Shown here piece by piece: positions 109-6,929 of a stretch of DNA of 11,108 nt (position 1 is its first letter; every line of letters starts with the position of its first letter). Under the pieces are notes generated by a model. It had not been told where the DNA came from. It was given only the letters and a program-made list of their open reading frames with translations, and did not search any database. Made by a program: the position numbers and the translations under genes. The DNA is taken from positions 1 to 11,108 of the IMG/VR virus record IMGVR_UViG_3300034091_000153; one strand, written 5' to 3'.

Positions 109-409
109 CTGCTTTTTTCTGGAGGCTGAAAACCTCGTCCGTCATTTCGTCCAATTCTGACCCCAGGCGAATCCTCCCCGTTTGCTCTGTGAGGACCGAA
201 ACGACGCCTCCCTGATTCATGTTGACGTTCACTTTCCCCGTCACTTTCCCGCCATGAATGAGCGACTGGATATGGGCAATGGCTTCGGGGATGCGCTCTT
301 TCTTTCTGAGCGCCACGGTTTCACGGTAGGAGACAATCTTCTCGCTCTTTACCACTTCGATTCCTAAGTCCTTTTCGATCTGCGTGCGGGTGTCCACTCT
401 TGCCTCCAT
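83..409 (-). CDS. Phage hypothetical protein, 108 aa
   Basis: ATG overlaps the portal stop (TAATG at 411-407). Protein-like composition, same strand as the morphogenesis block. Confidence 0.8.
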   Translation of the reverse strand: MEARVDTRTQIEKDLGIEVVKSEKIVSYRETVALRKKERIPEAIAHIQSLIHGGKVTGKVNVNMNQGGVVSVLTEQTGRIRLGSELDEMTDEVFSLQKKAVDTRANMA

Positions 410-2454
410 TAACTCGATTTGTTCACAGCACGTACTTGCCCCGATTGCGACCCCTTCATCGCGGGCTGCATGTCCTTTTTACCGCTTTGTTTTCTGCCGC
501 CGCCCTTGCCTTGTCCTGGGCCTTGAGGCTCGGGAGGGTTCAATCCGAGAGCAGCCGTCTTTCGGGCGAGAGCCGCCTTAACTTCGAGTTCCCATTCAGC
601 ATCTTCCAGTTGCTCCTCTTTCCATGCCTCATGACGAATTTGGTAATCGGGAACACCAATCTTTTCCATCGTGGTTTCGATGTCTATCGGAACCTTTTGT
701 TGGAGCATGAAGATTTGCGTCATGCGCTCAATCGTATGCGTGATATTGAGGAGTTGCGTCGGAGTATTTACCACTTTGAGTCGTTCGCAGAACCAGTCCG
801 CTCTTTGCTGCCGCGTGTGAGCACTGACATTGCTTTGATCCTCACCGGGAAGATGCGACGGCACCAGAGAGTTGGGATCGTTGTCGAACGTCTCAACTCC
901 TACCCCTTCCGGCCCAATCATGTCCATAATCATGTCTACGGTGAAGTATTGCGCGATGTTGTACTTGAGCATGTTCGCGTCTTTGGAGTTGGCAATCCAC
1001 TGATTCAACGCGATGCCCTTTGCTACCGGACCAAGATTCTCAATGAACTTGTCGAACGCCTGATCCGACATATTCCCCTTGACTTCGCGCAGGCTGGCAA
1101 TATCGGAAAGCCCCAAAGCGGCTTTGACAGCGGCGCTCAACATATCCACGCCCTTGTAATCGGCCTCCTCAACTGATACGCCTTCGGGCAGCAATGAACG
1201 GGTCCACTTGGAAGGATCGCCCTTGCCGCCGACTCTCACGCCTTGCGCGTGGAGCAAGTCGAGTTTGTCCATCTGCGTGCGAGAGACGCCTGTCGAGACA
1301 TCGGTTCCAAGCGGCGGGTCTTTCATGATCGCCAGAGTCGAATTGATGTCCGAAAGCCTGTCTCGGCGGGCGACTTCCAGACCTTTTACGCCAGAAACGA
1401 GCGAGTATCCTAGTGGAGACCAAACCCAGTCGTTGACTTCGTGCTTTGTCACTGGGATCGAACCATGCCAGTCGAACGCTGTGTCGTCATAAAGAGGGAC
1501 TGGACACGACGGCGAAGTGACCGCAAGCCTCATGCGTGGATACATCTTGCAGTCCGACATCTCGGCTTTTCGGGACTTGGGCAGCCCGGTGTCGGGGTCA
1601 ACAGTCACAATCAAATCGCCCAGCGTCGGAACCTTGTAGCCCCACGTCGATCCATCCACGCCCATCTGCTGCGTGTAGCCAGTGTCATTGATTCTTAGAT
1701 CATGAATGAAGTGGTAACGAATTTCGCAGTACTTCTCAATCCAATCCGAGTTGTTTGACCCGCCAAAACGCCAGCGGTCGTAGAACTCATAGCGCCTGAG
1801 CATGTTCTGCGTGACGTTGACCCCAGAGCGGGAGTACTGAGAAATCGGAGTGAGCCACTGCTGAAACTTTGGGAACCGCGCGTGTGCTTCCGAAAGGCCC
1901 ATCGGAAAAATGATCGTGCCCGCATAGCCATCGTCAAGATCGCCATTGTGCGGAAGCTGGTCGGGAAGAAATTCTCTCGGCCCAAGCGCCTCGAATTTCA
2001 TCTTGGCTGGTCCGATTCCGTGCCACGGGCGCGAGAATTTTTGCCACTTGTATCCGCGCCCCATGATGGCCCACTGGAGAGCTTTGCGGGTATTCGGAAC
2101 GTAGAGCGAGTCCCAAAACACAAATTTGAAGATGTCATTATAAAGAGCAACTGTCTTTTTGTTCTGCTTTGCCTTTGATCCCATCGTGGCAATCTGCCGG
2201 AGGTCGGTAATGGTCTCGACAAAGGAGCGGATGTCCGGCTGGAGCAGATTCGAGGGCATATCGCGCTCTTGCCCTGTTCCCATCAAAAGCTGAATGTCGT
2301 TGGTGAGATTGGCGATTCCAGGCTGCGCTTGCAACCAAGCGTCCCCGCTTTGCACCAGCTCATCGAACCAGCCCTTGAGGTAGGTTCCTCCCGCCTCGCG
2401 TGGAGGCGCTTGCCACGAGAGCACCTTTCCGTCGTCAGCGGCGTCTGTTATCAC
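409..2454 (-). CDS. Probable phage portal protein, 681 aa
   Basis: Long ORF just downstream of TerL, with size and position typical of a long (P22-like) portal. GTG start overlaps the previous stop (GTGA 2454-2451). Low-complexity Gly/Lys/Gln C-tail. Function inferred from synteny and general sequence character. Confidence 0.75.
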   Translation of the reverse strand: MITDAADDGKVLSWQAPPREAGGTYLKGWFDELVQSGDAWLQAQPGIANLTNDIQLLMGTGQERDMPSNLLQPDIRSFVETITDLRQIATMGSKAKQNKKTVALYNDIFKFVFWDSLYVPNTRKALQWAIMGRGYKWQKFSRPWHGIGPAKMKFEALGPREFLPDQLPHNGDLDDGYAGTIIFPMGLSEAHARFPKFQQWLTPISQYSRSGVNVTQNMLRRYEFYDRWRFGGSNNSDWIEKYCEIRYHFIHDLRINDTGYTQQMGVDGSTWGYKVPTLGDLIVTVDPDTGLPKSRKAEMSDCKMYPRMRLAVTSPSCPVPLYDDTAFDWHGSIPVTKHEVNDWVWSPLGYSLVSGVKGLEVARRDRLSDINSTLAIMKDPPLGTDVSTGVSRTQMDKLDLLHAQGVRVGGKGDPSKWTRSLLPEGVSVEEADYKGVDMLSAAVKAALGLSDIASLREVKGNMSDQAFDKFIENLGPVAKGIALNQWIANSKDANMLKYNIAQYFTVDMIMDMIGPEGVGVETFDNDPNSLVPSHLPGEDQSNVSAHTRQQRADWFCERLKVVNTPTQLLNITHTIERMTQIFMLQQKVPIDIETTMEKIGVPDYQIRHEAWKEEQLEDAEWELEVKAALARKTAALGLNPPEPQGPGQGKGGGRKQSGKKDMQPAMKGSQSGQVRAVNKSS

Positions 2455-2927
2455 TTGGCCATCGCTCCTGTCGCGGCATCTTTGACGATTCTAGTCTGAT
2501 CGCCGCCCTCCTCATACATTTCTGCGACTAGTCGCGGGATGGCCTCCATCTTCTGTTTCAGGATTCGGTCATATTCTCGATCCCAAGTGTCAAGCACGCG
2601 AATATTGACGGCGGCATTCCATCTGTCCAGTTGTGAGTTCCGCGCCAGAATCCCGTCTCTCACAGATTTGCGAAAGGCTTTTTCCCTTTCGAGTTTTCGT
2701 ACAGCAGCTTGCTCCTCATCGTCCTTGTGCTGTTGACGATATTGGTTCATGTAGCGGTCAAGCTCAGAGGCGTGAAAGCACACGATTGTCTCGTATCGGA
2801 TTCCTTGCGGTACGTTGAGCGGAGGACACCCCGAAATGCCGAAACTTAGGATGCGCCCGCTGTCAAGGTCACGAAAGACACAGGTCCGTTCCTTGCCTGT
2901 TAGCTGGACTGAGTTCGTAGCGGCCAT
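2451..2927 (-). CDS. Phage hypothetical protein, 158 aa, charged helical C-terminal half
   Basis: The ORF track gives 2451..3122, but ATG 2927 (MAATNSVQ...) avoids overlap with TerL. Stop is coupled to the portal start. Confidence 0.8.
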   Translation of the reverse strand: MAATNSVQLTGKERTCVFRDLDSGRILSFGISGCPPLNVPQGIRYETIVCFHASELDRYMNQYRQQHKDDEEQAAVRKLEREKAFRKSVRDGILARNSQLDRWNAAVNIRVLDTWDREYDRILKQKMEAIPRLVAEMYEEGGDQTRIVKDAATGAMAK

Positions 2928-2970
2928 ACTGCCAATACTATACCCTATTTCAAACAGAAAGCGGACGGAA

Positions 2971-5259
2971 TCACGCAATGACGCTCCGAGTACACCACTC
3001 GTCAGGCATGGCTTCCTTGACTTTTTTTTCGAGCGGCCAGCGGCTTTGTATGCGCGAAGCGGAGTTCTCAAGTTCATGGAACGTCGTCCACCCCATAGCC
3101 GAAGCGAAGATATTGTCGTCATGCTGGCCTTGGGAATGGATCATCTCACTCTTTCCTTGCTCACCTGTATATTTACGAACGAAAGTTGCAAGCTGCCGGA
3201 TCAGTATGGGATCGTTGAGAACCATCCACCCCGTATTCACGGCGTCCACCCAGCGGTCAAGGAGGTACGGTCTCGTGTAAACACGGGTGAACCAGCCCTC
3301 CTGATGCCCGGAGTCAGGCAAAATGTTGCCCTTCTTATCGATCCTGAGCATGACGTGATGATCCAGAAATCCCATGATTTTCAGTTGGCTCTGGCATTCA
3401 TCTCCCGGCTTCCTGATTTGCTCGACGATGAACTTGACGATAAGGGGATTTGAAGAGGTGACATTACACTTTCCATCTGTTCCGTAAAGGACCGCCACTG
3501 CCGCCGCGATGCGCGACATTTGCGGCGAATTGACACGGATCGAAGTAAACGACGCCACCTGCACATCCGGCTCCTTACCATGTCCATGTTTCTGAACAGA
3601 AAGGCTGGCGCGATCCTCCTTCGGCTTGTTTAGGCCACCCGCTGTGTCGATAGCAATGCAATACTCAGCGCCCACTTGCGGCTCCTCGAAAATCAAGAGT
3701 TTGTCGAAACAGGCTTCATCAGTGGAATCATCGAACGAACGCATAGAAACCAGATTCCAACGGTACTCGTTATCATCCAGCCCTTTCCATTCCAAGATGA
3801 TTTCTGGCTCATCTGGATTTATCTCCTCGGCATTGGGCTGATATGGTTGATTTTCGCTGCCCATCAAGATTGTGCGTCCAGTAACGGCATAGGCGACATA
3901 ATTCTGTTCGCGGGCTTCGGTAACGAGGTTGATAGTTTCGCTGGCGAATACAGAATCATTCTTCGATTGAAACGCATCTTGGGGGGTCACGGCATTGGCG
4001 GCAAGGAACTCTCTCTCCGCGTGTTTGGCAATTGCTTCCTCATATCCGCATTGCCAGAACCATTGAAACTCACGCGGCATCTCCCACCGCTGGCCTAGTA
4101 TTTTCCAGAGATAGTCAGTGGACCGGACGTAAAGCTCGCCCCGCCTACGCATCTTCCGCGTAGCATCGGTGATGTTCTGCTCCCACGGTTCGGGGACGGG
4201 ATGTTGGCGCAACCAATCGGCCGGCGGATAAAGGTCACTAGCGCAGGCTGGGGGAATGAAGAACGCGGTGAAGCGCCCTTTCTTTGCAGCATAGAGTTCC
4301 CAACTCTCTTTCTGCCACGGCGTCGCGGTCGATCCCGTTCCTTCCAGCACCATGAACAGCGAGGCAATCTGGTGACAGGCCGGGAACAGACCTTCATCCA
4401 AGGTGTGCTTGGGATTCGTGTAGTCGCCGAGTTCGCTCAGGTGAACACAGGAAGGCGAATCGCCTTGAGCGATACCGACTTCCTGTGCGCCCGCCTGTAC
4501 CGACAACCGGGAACCGTTGGTCCAGCGCGGCTCGGCTGACTTCGTGGAAGTCTGACCGACGCGCAACCAGAACGGCAACTTGTCCTGACAGGTGTCGATC
4601 ATGTTCTTGAGCTTCTGCGATTGGGGGACTTGCACCGACGCCATGACCGCGTAGGTGTTTGCCACGTAGAGGATGCGGTGCAAAAAGAAAAGCGCCGTGA
4701 CCGTCGAGACGCCCAACTGGCGAGCCTTCAAGATGAAAAGCTGAATTGCAATCTGGAGATCATCGCATTCGGCCAGGAACGCAAAAAAGATTCTCTGCGC
4801 ATTCCGAAAATCGAAGTGAATGATCTGCGTGTTTGCGGCGCGGATGTAGGCATAGCGGGTGACAAAGTATTCTGCCGATGCTGAGCATAGGAAACGTTCA
4901 TTCGCAACCCATCGCTTGATTTTATTGACCGTTGCCACAGAGGGAGATTTGTCGTCCTTCCAGAAAAAGTAAGACCTTGCGCCGGTTTTCGATTTCGACA
5001 CATCGGCGTACTTCTGAATCTCCTCCTGCATGTAGTCGCACTCGGCTACGTCGTGGAAGCGCGGTTCCCAGCCGTTCCGGCGTGCGAAGTCTGCGACTGT
5101 GAGATTGACGATGCGAGTGCTATACGTTTGGCACCACCCTCGGCGCAACGCCGCCGTACACTTCGAGTTCGGCTCGCCCATGTCGGGGAAAGCATTATCC
5201 CAGGCTTCATCGGCATCGGTGTCAGCATCCCGCTCCTCTGGAGGCCGCCACCATCTCAC
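2971..5259 (-). CDS. terL: Terminase large subunit (ATPase plus RNase H-like nuclease), up to 762 aa; start uncertain
   Basis: Walker A-like ILKARQLGVST, Walker B-like CVHLSELG, coupling-motif-like LEGTG, nuclease acidic motifs IAIDTAGG, DRASLSV and HDDNIFA. Lies upstream of the portal. Confidence 0.93.
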   Translation of the reverse strand: MRWWRPPEERDADTDADEAWDNAFPDMGEPNSKCTAALRRGWCQTYSTRIVNLTVADFARRNGWEPRFHDVAECDYMQEEIQKYADVSKSKTGARSYFFWKDDKSPSVATVNKIKRWVANERFLCSASAEYFVTRYAYIRAANTQIIHFDFRNAQRIFFAFLAECDDLQIAIQLFILKARQLGVSTVTALFFLHRILYVANTYAVMASVQVPQSQKLKNMIDTCQDKLPFWLRVGQTSTKSAEPRWTNGSRLSVQAGAQEVGIAQGDSPSCVHLSELGDYTNPKHTLDEGLFPACHQIASLFMVLEGTGSTATPWQKESWELYAAKKGRFTAFFIPPACASDLYPPADWLRQHPVPEPWEQNITDATRKMRRRGELYVRSTDYLWKILGQRWEMPREFQWFWQCGYEEAIAKHAEREFLAANAVTPQDAFQSKNDSVFASETINLVTEAREQNYVAYAVTGRTILMGSENQPYQPNAEEINPDEPEIILEWKGLDDNEYRWNLVSMRSFDDSTDEACFDKLLIFEEPQVGAEYCIAIDTAGGLNKPKEDRASLSVQKHGHGKEPDVQVASFTSIRVNSPQMSRIAAAVAVLYGTDGKCNVTSSNPLIVKFIVEQIRKPGDECQSQLKIMGFLDHHVMLRIDKKGNILPDSGHQEGWFTRVYTRPYLLDRWVDAVNTGWMVLNDPILIRQLATFVRKYTGEQGKSEMIHSQGQHDDNIFASAMGWTTFHELENSASRIQSRWPLEKKVKEAMPDEWCTRSVIA
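5172..5247. repeat. 76-bp perfect direct repeat, copy in the 5' end of terL
   Basis: gctcgcccatgtcggggaaagcattatcccaggcttcatcggcatcggtgtcagcatcccgctcctctggaggccg, identical base by base to 5766-5841. Confidence 0.98.
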
Positions 5260-5438
5260 TTCCCCGTTTCGATCAACATATTTATGCGCTGATACAAAAG
5301 GGGACGCAGAGATTCGAGTGAATCTGCACCCTTCATTTCTGTATTTGCCGAGTAGAGCTTCCCGCTATCTGTTCTTACAAGCAGAATGGCGGTTGTTTTT
5401 CCGTGTTGCTTGACTGCATGTAAGTGTAATTCTTTCAT
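5256..5438 (-). CDS. Small hypothetical protein, 60 aa
   Basis: ATGA overlap with the upstream ORF at 5438-5435. Its TGA overlaps the terL GTG (GTGA 5259-5256). Confidence 0.65.
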   Translation of the reverse strand: MKELHLHAVKQHGKTTAILLVRTDSGKLYSANTEMKGADSLESLRPLLYQRINMLIETGK

Positions 5439-5713
5439 TCCATGTACCCCTTAATCCGTTGGATTTCAGGCGGAAGAATATGCTCCCACCGCGTTCCGGG
5501 AAAGGGCTTCTTCGTGCCATCTGTGGAGTGCCAAACCCAATGGCCCTGTGCGATGTACATCCCCGGCATCTCCCATCCCAGGCGGATGCGGTAGCACCTG
5601 CACTCAGCCTCAAGCGCATTGTTCTGGACCAAAATAGTGCGTAGAGAATTCTCAAGCAGCAAAATCCTCCGACTGCCCCATCTGCGAAGCGCCCAATTAA
5701 GAATCTTCTTCAT
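5435..5713 (-). CDS. Small hypothetical protein, 92 aa, Trp/Arg-rich
   Basis: ATGA overlap with the TerS-like stop (5713-5710), with GGAGG upstream inside the preceding gene. Confidence 0.7.
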   Translation of the reverse strand: MKKILNWALRRWGSRRILLLENSLRTILVQNNALEAECRCYRIRLGWEMPGMYIAQGHWVWHSTDGTKKPFPGTRWEHILPPEIQRIKGYME

Positions 5714-6510
5714 TTTGTCTCAGCCTCCAAGAGCCTATGTTTCGCAGCCGAAAATCCCTGAATCTGCTCGCCCATGTCGGGGAAAGCATTATCCCAGGCT
5801 TCATCGGCATCGGTGTCAGCATCCCGCTCCTCTGGAGGCCGTCCAAAGCCGAAGTTGATCTCCACTCCGCCCTTTTTGGTTGGTAGGAATCCCACCGCCT
5901 CGTGCATGACCCGCTGCGCCGCCACGTCTCCATGATCGTAGCGCAGAACCTTGCCATTTTCATCGAATACCGGTTTGCCGCTCACGATAACAGGTACTCC
6001 CTCGATAGCGGAGTCAACCGTCGCCTGTACTACGTCTGGATGGGCCAGAATTGCCTTGAGCGCGCTTTCTGTGGCCTTCATGGACTGGGCGGCCATCAGG
6101 ATCGCTCCAAGCATCTCTACGGGGCTTACACGCGCTCTGACGCACATCGCCTCGAATGACAAAGCGCCAAGGTCAGCAGCGCCGATTTGCCGCATGGCAC
6201 CCACAAACTTCATGGCGCACGGCTGATTCGAGACAGCGGCAAAGGACAGGATGCGCTGGCGTGGTAAACGGCCAGATTTCCCGCCAAGACAGCGCGTGAG
6301 GATTTCTGAGGGTTCGGTAGAGCAGAGCGCCACTTCGTCAGGATCGATGTCCAGGCGCTTCATCACCGTAAGCGGAGTTCGATTACGACTGAGCGCGAAA
6401 CCTTTGCTCGAAGCGCCCGACTGTTTCTTCCGGCTCAAGTTCGTTGTACTCCTGGACGGTTTGGGGAAGGGGACGGTCCCCGACTCGGCTGATGGTGGCT
6501 TCTGTTTCAT
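5710..6510 (-). CDS. Terminase small subunit-like protein; start may be 6549, 6510 or 6366/6363
   Basis: Largest ORF upstream of terL. The helical segment VVQATVDSAIEG...GDVAAQRVMHEAVGFLP, then beta-like GGVEINF and an acidic tail, resembles the C-terminal oligomerisation region of many TerS proteins. Inferred from pattern and synteny. Confidence 0.6.
   Translation of the reverse strand: MKQKPPSAESGTVPFPKPSRSTTNLSRKKQSGASSKGFALSRNRTPLTVMKRLDIDPDEVALCSTEPSEILTRCLGGKSGRLPRQRILSFAAVSNQPCAMKFVGAMRQIGAADLGALSFEAMCVRARVSPVEMLGAILMAAQSMKATESALKAILAHPDVVQATVDSAIEGVPVIVSGKPVFDENGKVLRYDHGDVAAQRVMHEAVGFLPTKKGGVEINFGFGRPPEERDADTDADEAWDNAFPDMGEQIQGFSAAKHRLLEAETK
5766..5841. repeat. 76-bp perfect direct repeat, copy in the 3' part of the TerS-like gene
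   Basis: Identical to 5172-5247, offset 594 bp. Both encode RPPEERDADTDADEAWDNAFPDMGE on the minus strand. Confidence 0.98.
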
Positions 6511-6604
6511 CTGCAACAGGATACTCCCTATCTGCCCAGCGTTCGGCAACTTTCACAGCTCGGGAGAGAATGTCGAGCAGGCGGTCAATCTGTTTGGTGG
6601 TCAT
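6383..6604 (-). CDS. Hypothetical protein, 73 aa
   Basis: ATG overlaps the end of the upstream ORF. Natural-looking helical/acidic sequence MTTKQIDRLLDILSRAVKVAERWADREYP. Confidence 0.7.
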   Translation of the reverse strand: MTTKQIDRLLDILSRAVKVAERWADREYPVADETEATISRVGDRPLPQTVQEYNELEPEETVGRFEQRFRAQS

Positions 6605-6929
6605 ATTTCAGCCCCGTTGGGAAGGTTTCCATGTATTCGTACTCCAGAGCGCCCGGAGCACGTCTATAGAAGTCGATCAAATCTGCCGTGTCGAATCCTA
6701 CCGAGAATCCCTGAATGGTGGCTCCCTCCGGTATCGTAAACAGGCCGCGATACTTTTCAATCTCAGTGGTACATCCCGTCAGCGAGTTGCGGTAGAAGAA
6801 CCGATAGCTCCACACCCCCGAATCAGAAAGTGCCCATCCGTTCGGAGGCGCAAAGCAATAGATTTTCCTCGGCACCAACGTGGCGACGGCCGCAGCACCG
6901 AGAAGAGATAAAAAGGCCCGACGGTTCAT
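6585..6929 (-). CDS. Hypothetical protein with twin-arginine (Tat)-like signal, 114 aa
   Basis: N-terminus MNRRAFLSLLGAAAVATLVP matches RRxFL plus a hydrophobic stretch. GGAGGAG RBS and ATGA overlap. Confidence 0.75.
   Translation of the reverse strand: MNRRAFLSLLGAAAVATLVPRKIYCFAPPNGWALSDSGVWSYRFFYRNSLTGCTTEIEKYRGLFTIPEGATIQGFSVGFDTADLIDFYRRAPGALEYEYMETFPTGLKYDHQTD

What the first reader, a model, noticed from the sequence alone, without database searches (positions are those of the whole stretch)
5173..5259. TerL may carry a tethered copy of the TerS acidic C-terminal peptide
Seen: if terL starts at GTG 5259 (coupled to the upstream stop by GTGA), residues 5-29 are RPPEERDADTDADEAWDNAFPDMGE, identical to the near-C-terminal segment of the TerS-like protein. 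Established: in lambda gpNu1 and P22 gp3 the TerS C-terminal region contacts TerL. Inference: an in-cis copy could occupy the TerS-binding site and either pre-activate TerL or compete with TerS, independent of any recombination.
Basis: partly seen in the sequence, partly recalled or inferred. Interest (0 to 1): 0.7.

Follow-up and report, generated by a model that had tools for sequence, protein, structure and literature searches.

The report
TerS tail copy fused to TerL
In one uncultured soil or peat phage, a 76-base piece of the gene just upstream of the DNA-packaging motor gene (TerL) has been copied in frame onto the front of TerL; the copy is real, but nothing yet shows that it is translated or does anything.

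Summary
A 79-nt direct repeat (76-nt exact core, 5172-5247 = 5766-5841) encodes the same 25 residues twice. One copy sits 18 residues before the end of the gene upstream of TerL. The other forms codons 5-29 of the 762-aa TerL ORF, if that ORF starts at GTG 5259.

- **Context.** The two copies bracket a 2-gene insertion (ORF92, ORF60) at the TerS-TerL junction. Relatives carry other insertions there, including an HNH endonuclease.
- **Uniqueness.** About 25 related loci and 32 aligned TerL homologs have one tail copy and start TerL at M/L/V-Y-S. Only this genotype, seen in three assemblies, has the duplication.
- **Start codon.** At the conserved start position this phage has ACG. An upstream start (GTG 5259, overlapping the ORF60 stop as GTGA) is therefore plausible.
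- **Rival start.** The ACG is preceded by a well-spaced SD-like site. Three relatives use ATC or ATT at that position, so near-cognate initiation cannot be dismissed.
- **Structure.** AlphaFold gives residues 1-43 pLDDT about 30, so there is no sign of docking. The copy also lacks the second conserved half of the tail.
- **TerS identity.** This rests on gene position and one weak fold match.

Most likely this is a recent duplication scar that is tolerated as a disordered N-terminal extension. A regulatory role is untested.

The parts
5172..5247 (-). Repeat copy 1, 76-nt exact core (79 nt as 5169-5247). It forms codons 5-29, and part of codon 30, of the long TerL ORF.
5766..5841 (-). Repeat copy 2, the source copy. 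It encodes the conserved acidic W-D-x-A-F-P motif of the TerS-like protein, 18 residues before its stop.
2971..5259 (-). TerL ORF, 762 aa from GTG 5259. The homologous core begins at Y46, and homologs are 716-724 aa.
5257..5259 (-). GTG, the first start codon of the ORF. It overlaps the ORF60 stop as GTGA. Its SD is poor (GGGGA, 1 nt spacing).
5125..5127 (-). ACG (Thr45), at the position where relatives have ATG, TTG or GTG, and rarely ATC or ATT, as the TerL start.
5133..5141 (-). SD-like GAGGGTGGT, 5 nt upstream of the ACG. Duplex energy with the anti-SD is -7.8 kcal/mol.
5179..5181 (-). In-frame ATG (M27) inside the repeat, with no SD. A start here would leave out the acidic motif.
5146..5148 (-). 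In-frame TTG (L38) in the 45-nt linker, with a weak SD. It would give a 7-residue extension only.
5256..5438 (-). ORF60, a 60-aa protein. It overlaps ORF92 as ATGA, has no family match and has no relative among the loci held here. The database-wide homolog search failed, so wider relatives are untested.
5435..5713 (-). ORF92, a 92-aa protein. Its start overlaps the TerS-like stop as ATGA, with GGAGG upstream. It has a single homolog (60% identity) among 1.84 billion representative proteins, in an unrelated context.
5710..6363 (-). TerS-like gene, 217 aa from ATG 6363; the ORF stays open up to TTG 6549. It has a helical N-terminal domain and a conserved acidic/aromatic C-terminal tail.

Best explanation
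**What it is.** A 76-79-nt stretch of the resident TerS-like gene, covering the first half of its conserved C-terminal tail motif, was recently copied. The copy landed in the short spacer between an inserted two-gene cassette (ORF92, ORF60) and TerL. It happens to be in frame with TerL and free of stops.

**How TerL is probably made (inferred).** TerL is most likely translated, at least in large part, from GTG 5259. This would happen by termination-reinitiation at the GTGA overlap with ORF60. The product would carry a 44-residue, intrinsically disordered N-terminal extension that contains the 25-residue acidic TerS peptide. The conserved start position now reads ACG but keeps an SD-like site, so a minor native-length isoform made by near-cognate initiation is possible.

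**What the peptide does (inferred).** The extension is most likely a tolerated scar of the rearrangement, not an evolved regulatory device. Any effect on TerS binding is untested.

**Shown versus inferred.** Shown:
- the repeat, its frame and its sharp borders;
- its uniqueness to this genotype;
- the ACG at the conserved start;
- the chain of gene overlaps;
- the low pLDDT of the extension.

Inferred:
- which start is used;
- that the peptide is neutral.
For: - **Repeat and frame:**
- **Sharp, non-homologous flanks, meaning a discrete patch:**
- **Junction is an insertion hotspot.** ORF92 and ORF60 are absent from all relatives. Other relatives hold an HNH endonuclease, a PAPS reductase plus a methyltransferase fragment, or other small genes at the same junction.
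- **Normal state.** In most relatives the TerS-like stop abuts the TerL start.
- **Start codon.** Of 24 distinct relatives, 21 have ATG, TTG or GTG at the conserved position. The window has ACG.
- **GTG 5259.** It is the first start after the upstream in-frame stop and overlaps the ORF60 stop. The same 4-nt overlap links ORF127/159, ORF159/114, TerS-like/ORF92 and ORF92/ORF60, and as GTGA it links ORF223 to the 681-aa ORF.
- **Initiation efficiency in E. coli.** GUG initiates at 10-100% of AUG. [quoted passage not shown]
- **Gene callers.** They gave 762 aa in all three assemblies.
- **Extension is disordered.** pLDDT is 27-33 for residues 1-43 and 68-93 from residue 44 onward.
- **No sign of decay.** TerL keeps all the columns that are invariant across the aligned family.
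Against: - The SD before GTG 5259 is poor.
- The best SD-like site among the TerL start candidates lies before the ACG.
- Three relatives start TerL at ATC or ATT, with in-frame stops just upstream. This family therefore tolerates near-cognate starts.
- All 32 aligned homologs begin at M/L/V-Y-S, and the Tyr is invariant. A free native N-terminus may matter.
- The three assemblies are one genotype, so there is no sequence variation with which to test selection.
- There are no expression data.
Confidence: 0.5

Rival explanations
1. TerL starts at the ACG by near-cognate initiation, driven by the well-placed SD-like site. The functional protein then has the native M-Y-S N-terminus. The upstream repeat is translated little or not at all, and matters only as DNA.
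For: - SD-like GAGGGTGGT lies 5 nt before the ACG, at -7.8 kcal/mol. This is the same spacing and strength as in three relatives whose only possible start is ATC or ATT.
- Eight of 24 relatives use the weak starts TTG or GTG. Low TerL translation therefore appears to be the norm in this family.
- The native N-terminus is conserved in every homolog.
Against: - In E. coli, ACG falls in the 0.1-1% of AUG class, below AUU and AUC.
- I know of no natural bacterial or phage gene shown to start at ACG (own knowledge, not searched exhaustively).
- Ribosomes elongating from GTG 5259 would run through the site.
- Unlike the three relatives, the upstream frame here is open and holds three canonical in-frame starts.
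Confidence: 0.25
2. The extended TerL is made, and its tethered acidic peptide occupies the TerS-tail binding site in cis. There it either pre-activates TerL or competes with TerS.
For: - In lambda and P22 the TerS C-terminus binds TerL. In P22 it binds the first 23 TerL residues (PMC9611059).
- The copied motif is the most conserved part of the tail. F is invariant, P is nearly invariant, and an acidic run precedes them.
- The TerL N-terminal region is itself conserved, and the copy sits right next to it.
Against: - AlphaFold2 shows no confident docking (pLDDT about 30). This is a weak negative, because the alignment has no depth over the extension.
- The copy lacks the second conserved half of the tail.
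- It occurs in one genotype only among roughly 50 relatives.
- That the tail binds TerL in this family is assumed, not shown.
- The TerS identity is itself weak.
Confidence: 0.1
3. TerL starts at the internal ATG (M27, 5181) or TTG (L38, 5148). This would give a short extension of 18 or 7 residues without the acidic motif.
For: Both are canonical in-frame start codons upstream of the lost start.
Against: Neither has a usable SD (-4.0 at spacing 15, and -5.0 at spacing 1). Both lie inside an ORF that upstream-initiated ribosomes would be reading.
Confidence: 0.1
4. The repeat matters as DNA. One version: it is a substrate for homologous recombination that deletes 594 nt and fuses the TerS-like ORF in frame to TerL. 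Another version: it duplicates a packaging-site element.
For: - The 76-nt exact direct repeat has a spacing that is a multiple of 3 and both copies are in the same frame, so a deletion would give an in-frame fusion.
- pac sites often lie inside TerS genes (own knowledge).
Against: - Relatives package with a single copy.
- No deletion variant was found in IMG/VR.
- The fusion would lose the last 18 residues of the TerS-like protein.
Confidence: 0.05

Closest known systems
Lambda gpNu1-gpA and P22 gp3-gp2 terminase subunit contacts
   Same: - A small gene sits directly upstream of TerL.
- Its conserved C-terminal tail is the natural candidate for the TerL contact.
- In those systems the TerL N-terminus is the contact site (PMC9611059).
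   Different: - There is no sequence or significant fold relationship to gpNu1 or gp3.
- Here part of the tail is duplicated onto TerL itself. I found no report of this (not an exhaustive search).
- Binding is untested.
T4 gp17-type large terminase (Pfam Terminase_6N)
   Same: The ATPase region of the family profile matches gp17 structures 3ezk, 3cpe and 2o0h at E about 3e-7. PHROG TerL families also match.
   Different: - The family is very divergent. No member passes Pfam thresholds (best E = 0.03 in 7 of 33 members).
- It has an extra conserved N-terminal region of about 70 residues.
- This member alone has a 44-codon upstream extension.
Moron or homing-gene insertion at a phage gene junction
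   Same: A short cassette of small genes sits between two conserved, normally abutting genes. Different cassettes, one of them an HNH endonuclease, sit at the same junction in relatives.
   Different: The cassette is bounded by a 76-79-nt direct repeat of host-gene coding sequence. This is far longer than a transposon target-site duplication, and no endonuclease or transposase lies in this cassette.
Near-cognate start codons in bacteria, such as AUU of infC
   Same: A weak start paired with a good SD sits at a conserved start position. Relatives use ATC or ATT there.
   Different: The codon here is ACG, which is less efficient in E. coli, and a canonical in-frame GTG lies upstream.

Membership tests
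Large terminase subunit (T4 gp17-like) | Homology to the TerL ATPase domain (Walker A region) | tested here: met
   The A2 profile matches gp17 chains at E = 2.6e-7 to 6.5e-7. phrog_5989 matches at 1.4e-10 and phrog_2 at 4.3e-7.
Large terminase subunit (T4 gp17-like) | C-terminal RNase H-like nuclease domain | tested here: inconclusive
   The phrog_2 match runs over residues 89-543.
Small terminase subunit (TerS) | Gene directly upstream of TerL and expressed with it | tested here: met
   In most relatives the stop abuts the TerL start. In the window the two genes are separated only by the 2-gene insertion.
Small terminase subunit (TerS) | Sequence or fold match to a known TerS family | tested here: not met
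   There were no Pfam or PHROG hits for the window protein. The PDB sequence search found nothing and Foldseek against PDB found nothing. The best BFVD hit is a TerS, but only at E = 7e-3, probability 0.6 and TM 0.17.
Small terminase subunit (TerS) | N-terminal DNA-binding (helix-turn-helix) domain and ring-forming oligomerisation core | tested here: inconclusive
   AlphaFold2 predicts a confident all-helical domain over residues 1-120, but it matches no HTH family. Oligomerisation cannot be tested with these tools.
TerS C-terminal tail binding the TerL N-terminus (lambda, P22 type) | Physical binding of the tail to TerL | not testable with these tools
   Only indirect evidence exists. The tail motif is conserved and so is the TerL N-terminal region. 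The cis copy is not docked in the AlphaFold2 model.
Translationally coupled genes (NTGA overlap) | The start codon overlaps the upstream stop by 4 nt, within a co-directional operon | tested here: met
   GTGA lies at 5256-5259. Five other 4-nt overlaps occur in the same gene chain. Actual coupling was not measured.
Transposon target-site duplication | A short duplication (about 2-15 bp) flanking an element that has terminal inverted repeats and a transposase | tested here: not met
   The repeat is 76-79 nt. No inverted repeat bounds the insert, and no transposase or endonuclease family matches ORF92 or ORF60.

The most novel reading that the evidence does not exclude
The 762-aa form is the functional TerL of this phage. 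Its tethered half-copy of the TerS tail acts as a built-in pseudo-ligand, either autoinhibitory or pre-activating, for the TerS docking site at the TerL N-terminus. It may have been fixed as a suppressor after the native start codon was lost. That would make it a natural experiment in how the TerS tail controls the packaging motor.
Probability: 0.08. Interest if true: 0.65.

Novelty: new variant of a known kind. Interest (0 to 1): 0.33.

Why it matters
How TerS switches TerL between its nuclease and motor states is still poorly understood. Stable TerS:TerL complexes are known from only a few phages (PMC9611059).

A TerL that naturally carries part of the TerS tail in cis would be a ready-made construct for studying that contact. 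This holds only if the long form is made and the peptide binds.

As the evidence stands, the value is more modest:
- It is a clean example of how an insertion hotspot plus a short templated duplication can rewrite the 5' end of an essential phage gene.
- It shows that this uncharacterised terminase family, from phages linked to Acidobacteriota, repeatedly uses weak or near-cognate start codons for TerL.

Tried and rejected
- **Assembly artefact: rejected.** Three assemblies, from two JGI samples and one ENA assembly, carry the identical structure. The only other way to resolve the four junctions would need a 594-bp circle.
- **Decaying prophage: rejected as unsupported.** TerL keeps every family-invariant column and has no frameshift.
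- **Older, longer duplication homogenised by gene conversion: no support.** The flanks on both sides are not more similar than shuffled sequence.
- **Recurrence in relatives: not found.** The tail motif is present once per locus in about 25 other loci. No homolog has an N-terminal extension.
- **Pre-duplication or ATG-bearing variants in IMG/VR: none**.
- **Identity of ORF92 and ORF60.** There are no family hits. ORF92 has a single homolog, in another context. The ORF60 homolog search failed.
- **TerS identity.** Pfam, PHROGs, the PDB sequence search and Foldseek against PDB were all negative. Only a weak BFVD TerS hit appeared.
- **RNA and signals.** There were no Rfam hits in the window. No promoter-like site was found in 4900-6700, and terminator-like sites were no more frequent than in shuffles.
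- **Literature on natural TerS-TerL fusions.** The terms tried returned nothing relevant.

Full report
**1. Observation**

All genes in the window lie on the minus strand. The repeat finder reports a 79-nt direct repeat at 5169-5247 and 5763-5841, 78/79 identical. Its start-to-start spacing is 594 nt, which is 198 codons. A script shows a 76-nt exact core, 5172-5247 = 5766-5841. By my arithmetic this could not arise by chance in 11 kb.

Both copies are read in the same frame and give the same 25 residues.
- **Copy 2** lies 18 residues before the stop of ORF 5710-6549.
- **Copy 1** forms codons 5-29 of the 762-aa ORF 2971-5259. That ORF's first start codon, GTG 5259, overlaps the TGA of the preceding 60-aa ORF as GTGA.

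The flanks of the two copies are unrelated (p = 0.36 and 0.42 against shuffles). The duplication is therefore a discrete patch with sharp borders.

The window is IMG/VR contig 3300034091_000153. The same sequence, 100% identical over all 11,108 nt, is in a 52-kb JGI contig and a 30-kb ENA contig. This rules out a one-off mis-assembly. It also means there is only one genotype to study.

**2. What the genes are**

*TerL.* The 762-aa protein is a large terminase.
- PHROG TerL families match at 1.4e-10 and 4.3e-7.
- A profile of 33 family members matches the ATPase domain of T4 gp17 structures at about 3e-7.
- No member reaches Pfam thresholds, so the family is divergent.

*The upstream protein.* It has 93 homologs, all unnamed, of 160-283 aa. 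Gene callers start it at ATG 6363, giving 217 aa.
- The AlphaFold2 model has a confident all-helical domain (residues 1-120) and a low-confidence tail.
- Pfam, PHROGs, the PDB sequence search and Foldseek against PDB give nothing.
- The best BFVD match is a TerS, but it is weak: E = 7e-3, TM 0.17.

Calling it TerS therefore rests mainly on position. In most relatives its stop codon directly abuts the TerL start.

Its C-terminal tail is the best conserved linear motif in the protein. The tail consists of an acidic run, then W-D-x-A-F-P with an invariant F and a near-invariant P, then a W-S..K-H-K-L-L-E-G helix. The duplicated patch covers only the first of these two halves.

**3. Context: an insertion hotspot**

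Between the two repeat copies lie ORF92 and ORF60. They are chained to their neighbours by ATGA, ATGA and GTGA overlaps.
- Neither occurs in any related locus.
- ORF92 has a single homolog (60% identity) among 1.84 billion representative proteins, on a 1.2-kb contig with unrelated neighbours.

In relatives the same junction is either empty or holds other cargo:
- an HNH endonuclease plus a PHROG-24928 protein (L007);
- a PAPS reductase and a methyltransferase fragment (L019);
- homologs of two genes that in the window lie upstream of the TerS-like gene (L005).

The junction is therefore a recurrent insertion site. Only this phage has a second copy of the tail: about 25 other loci with both genes have exactly one.

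**4. Where does TerL start?**

All 32 aligned homologs begin M/L/V-Y-S, and the Tyr (Y46 in the window) is invariant. At the DNA level, the conserved start position in 24 distinct relatives reads as follows:

| Codon | Relatives |
|---|---|
| ATG | 13 |
| TTG | 6 |
| GTG | 2 |
| ATC | 2 |
| ATT | 1 |

The window has ACG there (5125-5127). The native canonical start is gone. The upstream frame is open for 44 codons and holds three canonical in-frame starts: GTG 5259, ATG 5181 and TTG 5148.

*For GTG 5259.*
- It is the first start codon after the upstream in-frame stop.
- It repeats the 4-nt overlap pattern used at five other junctions in this operon, including another GTGA at the 681-aa ORF.
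- GUG is a canonical initiator, at 10-100% of AUG in E. coli. ACG belongs to the 0.1-1% class (bioRxiv 10.1101/063800).
- Gene callers chose it in all three assemblies.

*Against GTG 5259.*
- Its SD is poor.
- The best SD-like site among the TerL start candidates, GAGGGTGGT at 5133-5141, lies 5 nt before the ACG at -7.8 kcal/mol.
- The three relatives with ATC or ATT have in-frame stops just upstream and no canonical alternative. They carry SD-like sites of the same strength and spacing. This family evidently tolerates near-cognate TerL starts.

I conclude that the extended isoform is probably made, because ribosomes terminating on ORF60 sit on a canonical start. A native-length isoform initiated at ACG cannot be excluded. 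ATG 5181 and TTG 5148 have no usable SD.

**5. Does the peptide do anything?**

In lambda and P22 the TerS C-terminus binds TerL, and in P22 it binds the first 23 residues of TerL (PMC9611059). A copy placed just before the conserved TerL N-terminus is therefore in a suggestive position.

Nothing positive supports a function, however.
- AlphaFold2 leaves residues 1-43 at pLDDT 27-33, while the core from residue 44 onward reaches 68-93. This is a weak negative, because the alignment has no depth over the extension.
- The copy lacks the second conserved half of the tail.
- The arrangement is unique to one genotype.
- There is no sequence variation with which to test selection.

The simplest reading is a recent templated duplication at the edge of an insertion. 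It happened to be in frame and is tolerated as a disordered N-terminal tag. The ATG-to-ACG change could have come before it, with the new upstream start acting as a rescue. It could also have come after it, once the internal Met was no longer needed. The order cannot be told from these data.

**6. Comparison and novelty**

The module works like a classical TerS/TerL pair with a T4-type TerL. Membership of TerL in the large-terminase class is met. Membership of the upstream protein in any known TerS family is not met, although its position fits.

The 76-79-nt repeat is not a transposon target-site duplication. It is too long, has no inverted repeats and has no transposase.

I found no report of a TerL carrying a duplicated TerS tail (not an exhaustive search). 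I rate it a new variant of a known kind, of modest interest unless the long form is shown to be made and the peptide is shown to bind.

**7. Limits**

- The ORF60 homolog search failed.
- No multimer prediction tool, expression data or read-level data were available.

Noticed in passing
L027:378-380, L034:2966-2968, L108:504-506: Three distant relatives have ATC, ATT and ATC at the conserved TerL start position. Each has an in-frame stop 2-15 codons upstream, no canonical start in between, and an SD-like site at spacing 4-5 (-7.8 to -10.3 kcal/mol). A further 8 of 24 relatives use TTG or GTG. Weak or near-cognate initiation of TerL looks like a recurrent trait of this family.
   Followed up: partly
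L007:284-880; L019:4175-6053; L005:1561-2180: The TerS-like/TerL junction is an insertion hotspot in relatives. L007 holds an HNH endonuclease (phrog_99, 7e-34) plus a phrog_24928 protein. L019 holds a PAPS reductase (phrog_424, 3e-49), a C5-methyltransferase fragment and a 168-aa ORF. L005 holds homologs of window ORF114 and ORF183.
   Followed up: partly
proteins P0020, P0039, P0067, P0088, P0105: Several TerL homologs are 1062-1106 aa long and carry LAGLIDADG or intein-splicing Pfam domains (PF14528, PF14890). Inteins therefore interrupt TerL in some members of the family.
   Followed up: no
L004:5126-5131, L011/L012 and L018:6130-6135, L008:1223-1228, L003:587-592: In six relatives the TerS-like stop (TAG) and the TerL start codon are adjacent codons in the same frame. 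Read-through of a single stop would fuse the whole TerS-like protein to TerL.
   Followed up: no
window 5226-5238 and 5820-5832 (minus strand): Inside each repeat copy the codons for E-E-R-D form GAGGAG, followed 4 nt later by an out-of-frame ATG (-8.2 kcal/mol). In the TerL copy this opens a 60-codon +1-frame ORF (5046-5228). It is probably meaningless, but it is the strongest SD-plus-ATG combination in this stretch.
   Followed up: no
L022:1-1749 versus L023:1-1467: The 30-kb ENA contig and the 52-kb JGI contig differ by a single mismatch (99.99% identity) over their shared 14.5 kb, then diverge completely upstream. The JGI contig begins with a zinc alcohol dehydrogenase gene and an HI1420-downstream-like gene. 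This could be a mosaic boundary or a prophage edge.
   Followed up: no
window 409-2454 (-) and 2451-3122 (-): The 681-aa ORF after TerL, in the position where a portal gene would be expected, has no Pfam or PHROG match. It starts at a GTG that overlaps the preceding stop as GTGA. Homology of the preceding ORF to relatives begins only around residue 65-71, so its real start is probably downstream of the ATG at 3122.
   Followed up: no
L105-L110, L145, L155, L161, L173: Relatives of this TerL in genome bins fall mostly in Acidobacteriota MAGs (Terracidiphilus, Acidobacteriaceae, Acidisarcina, Acidipila, Terriglobales). That suggests the host group. One close relative sits in a bin labelled Saccharibacteria, possibly through mis-binning.
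   Followed up: no
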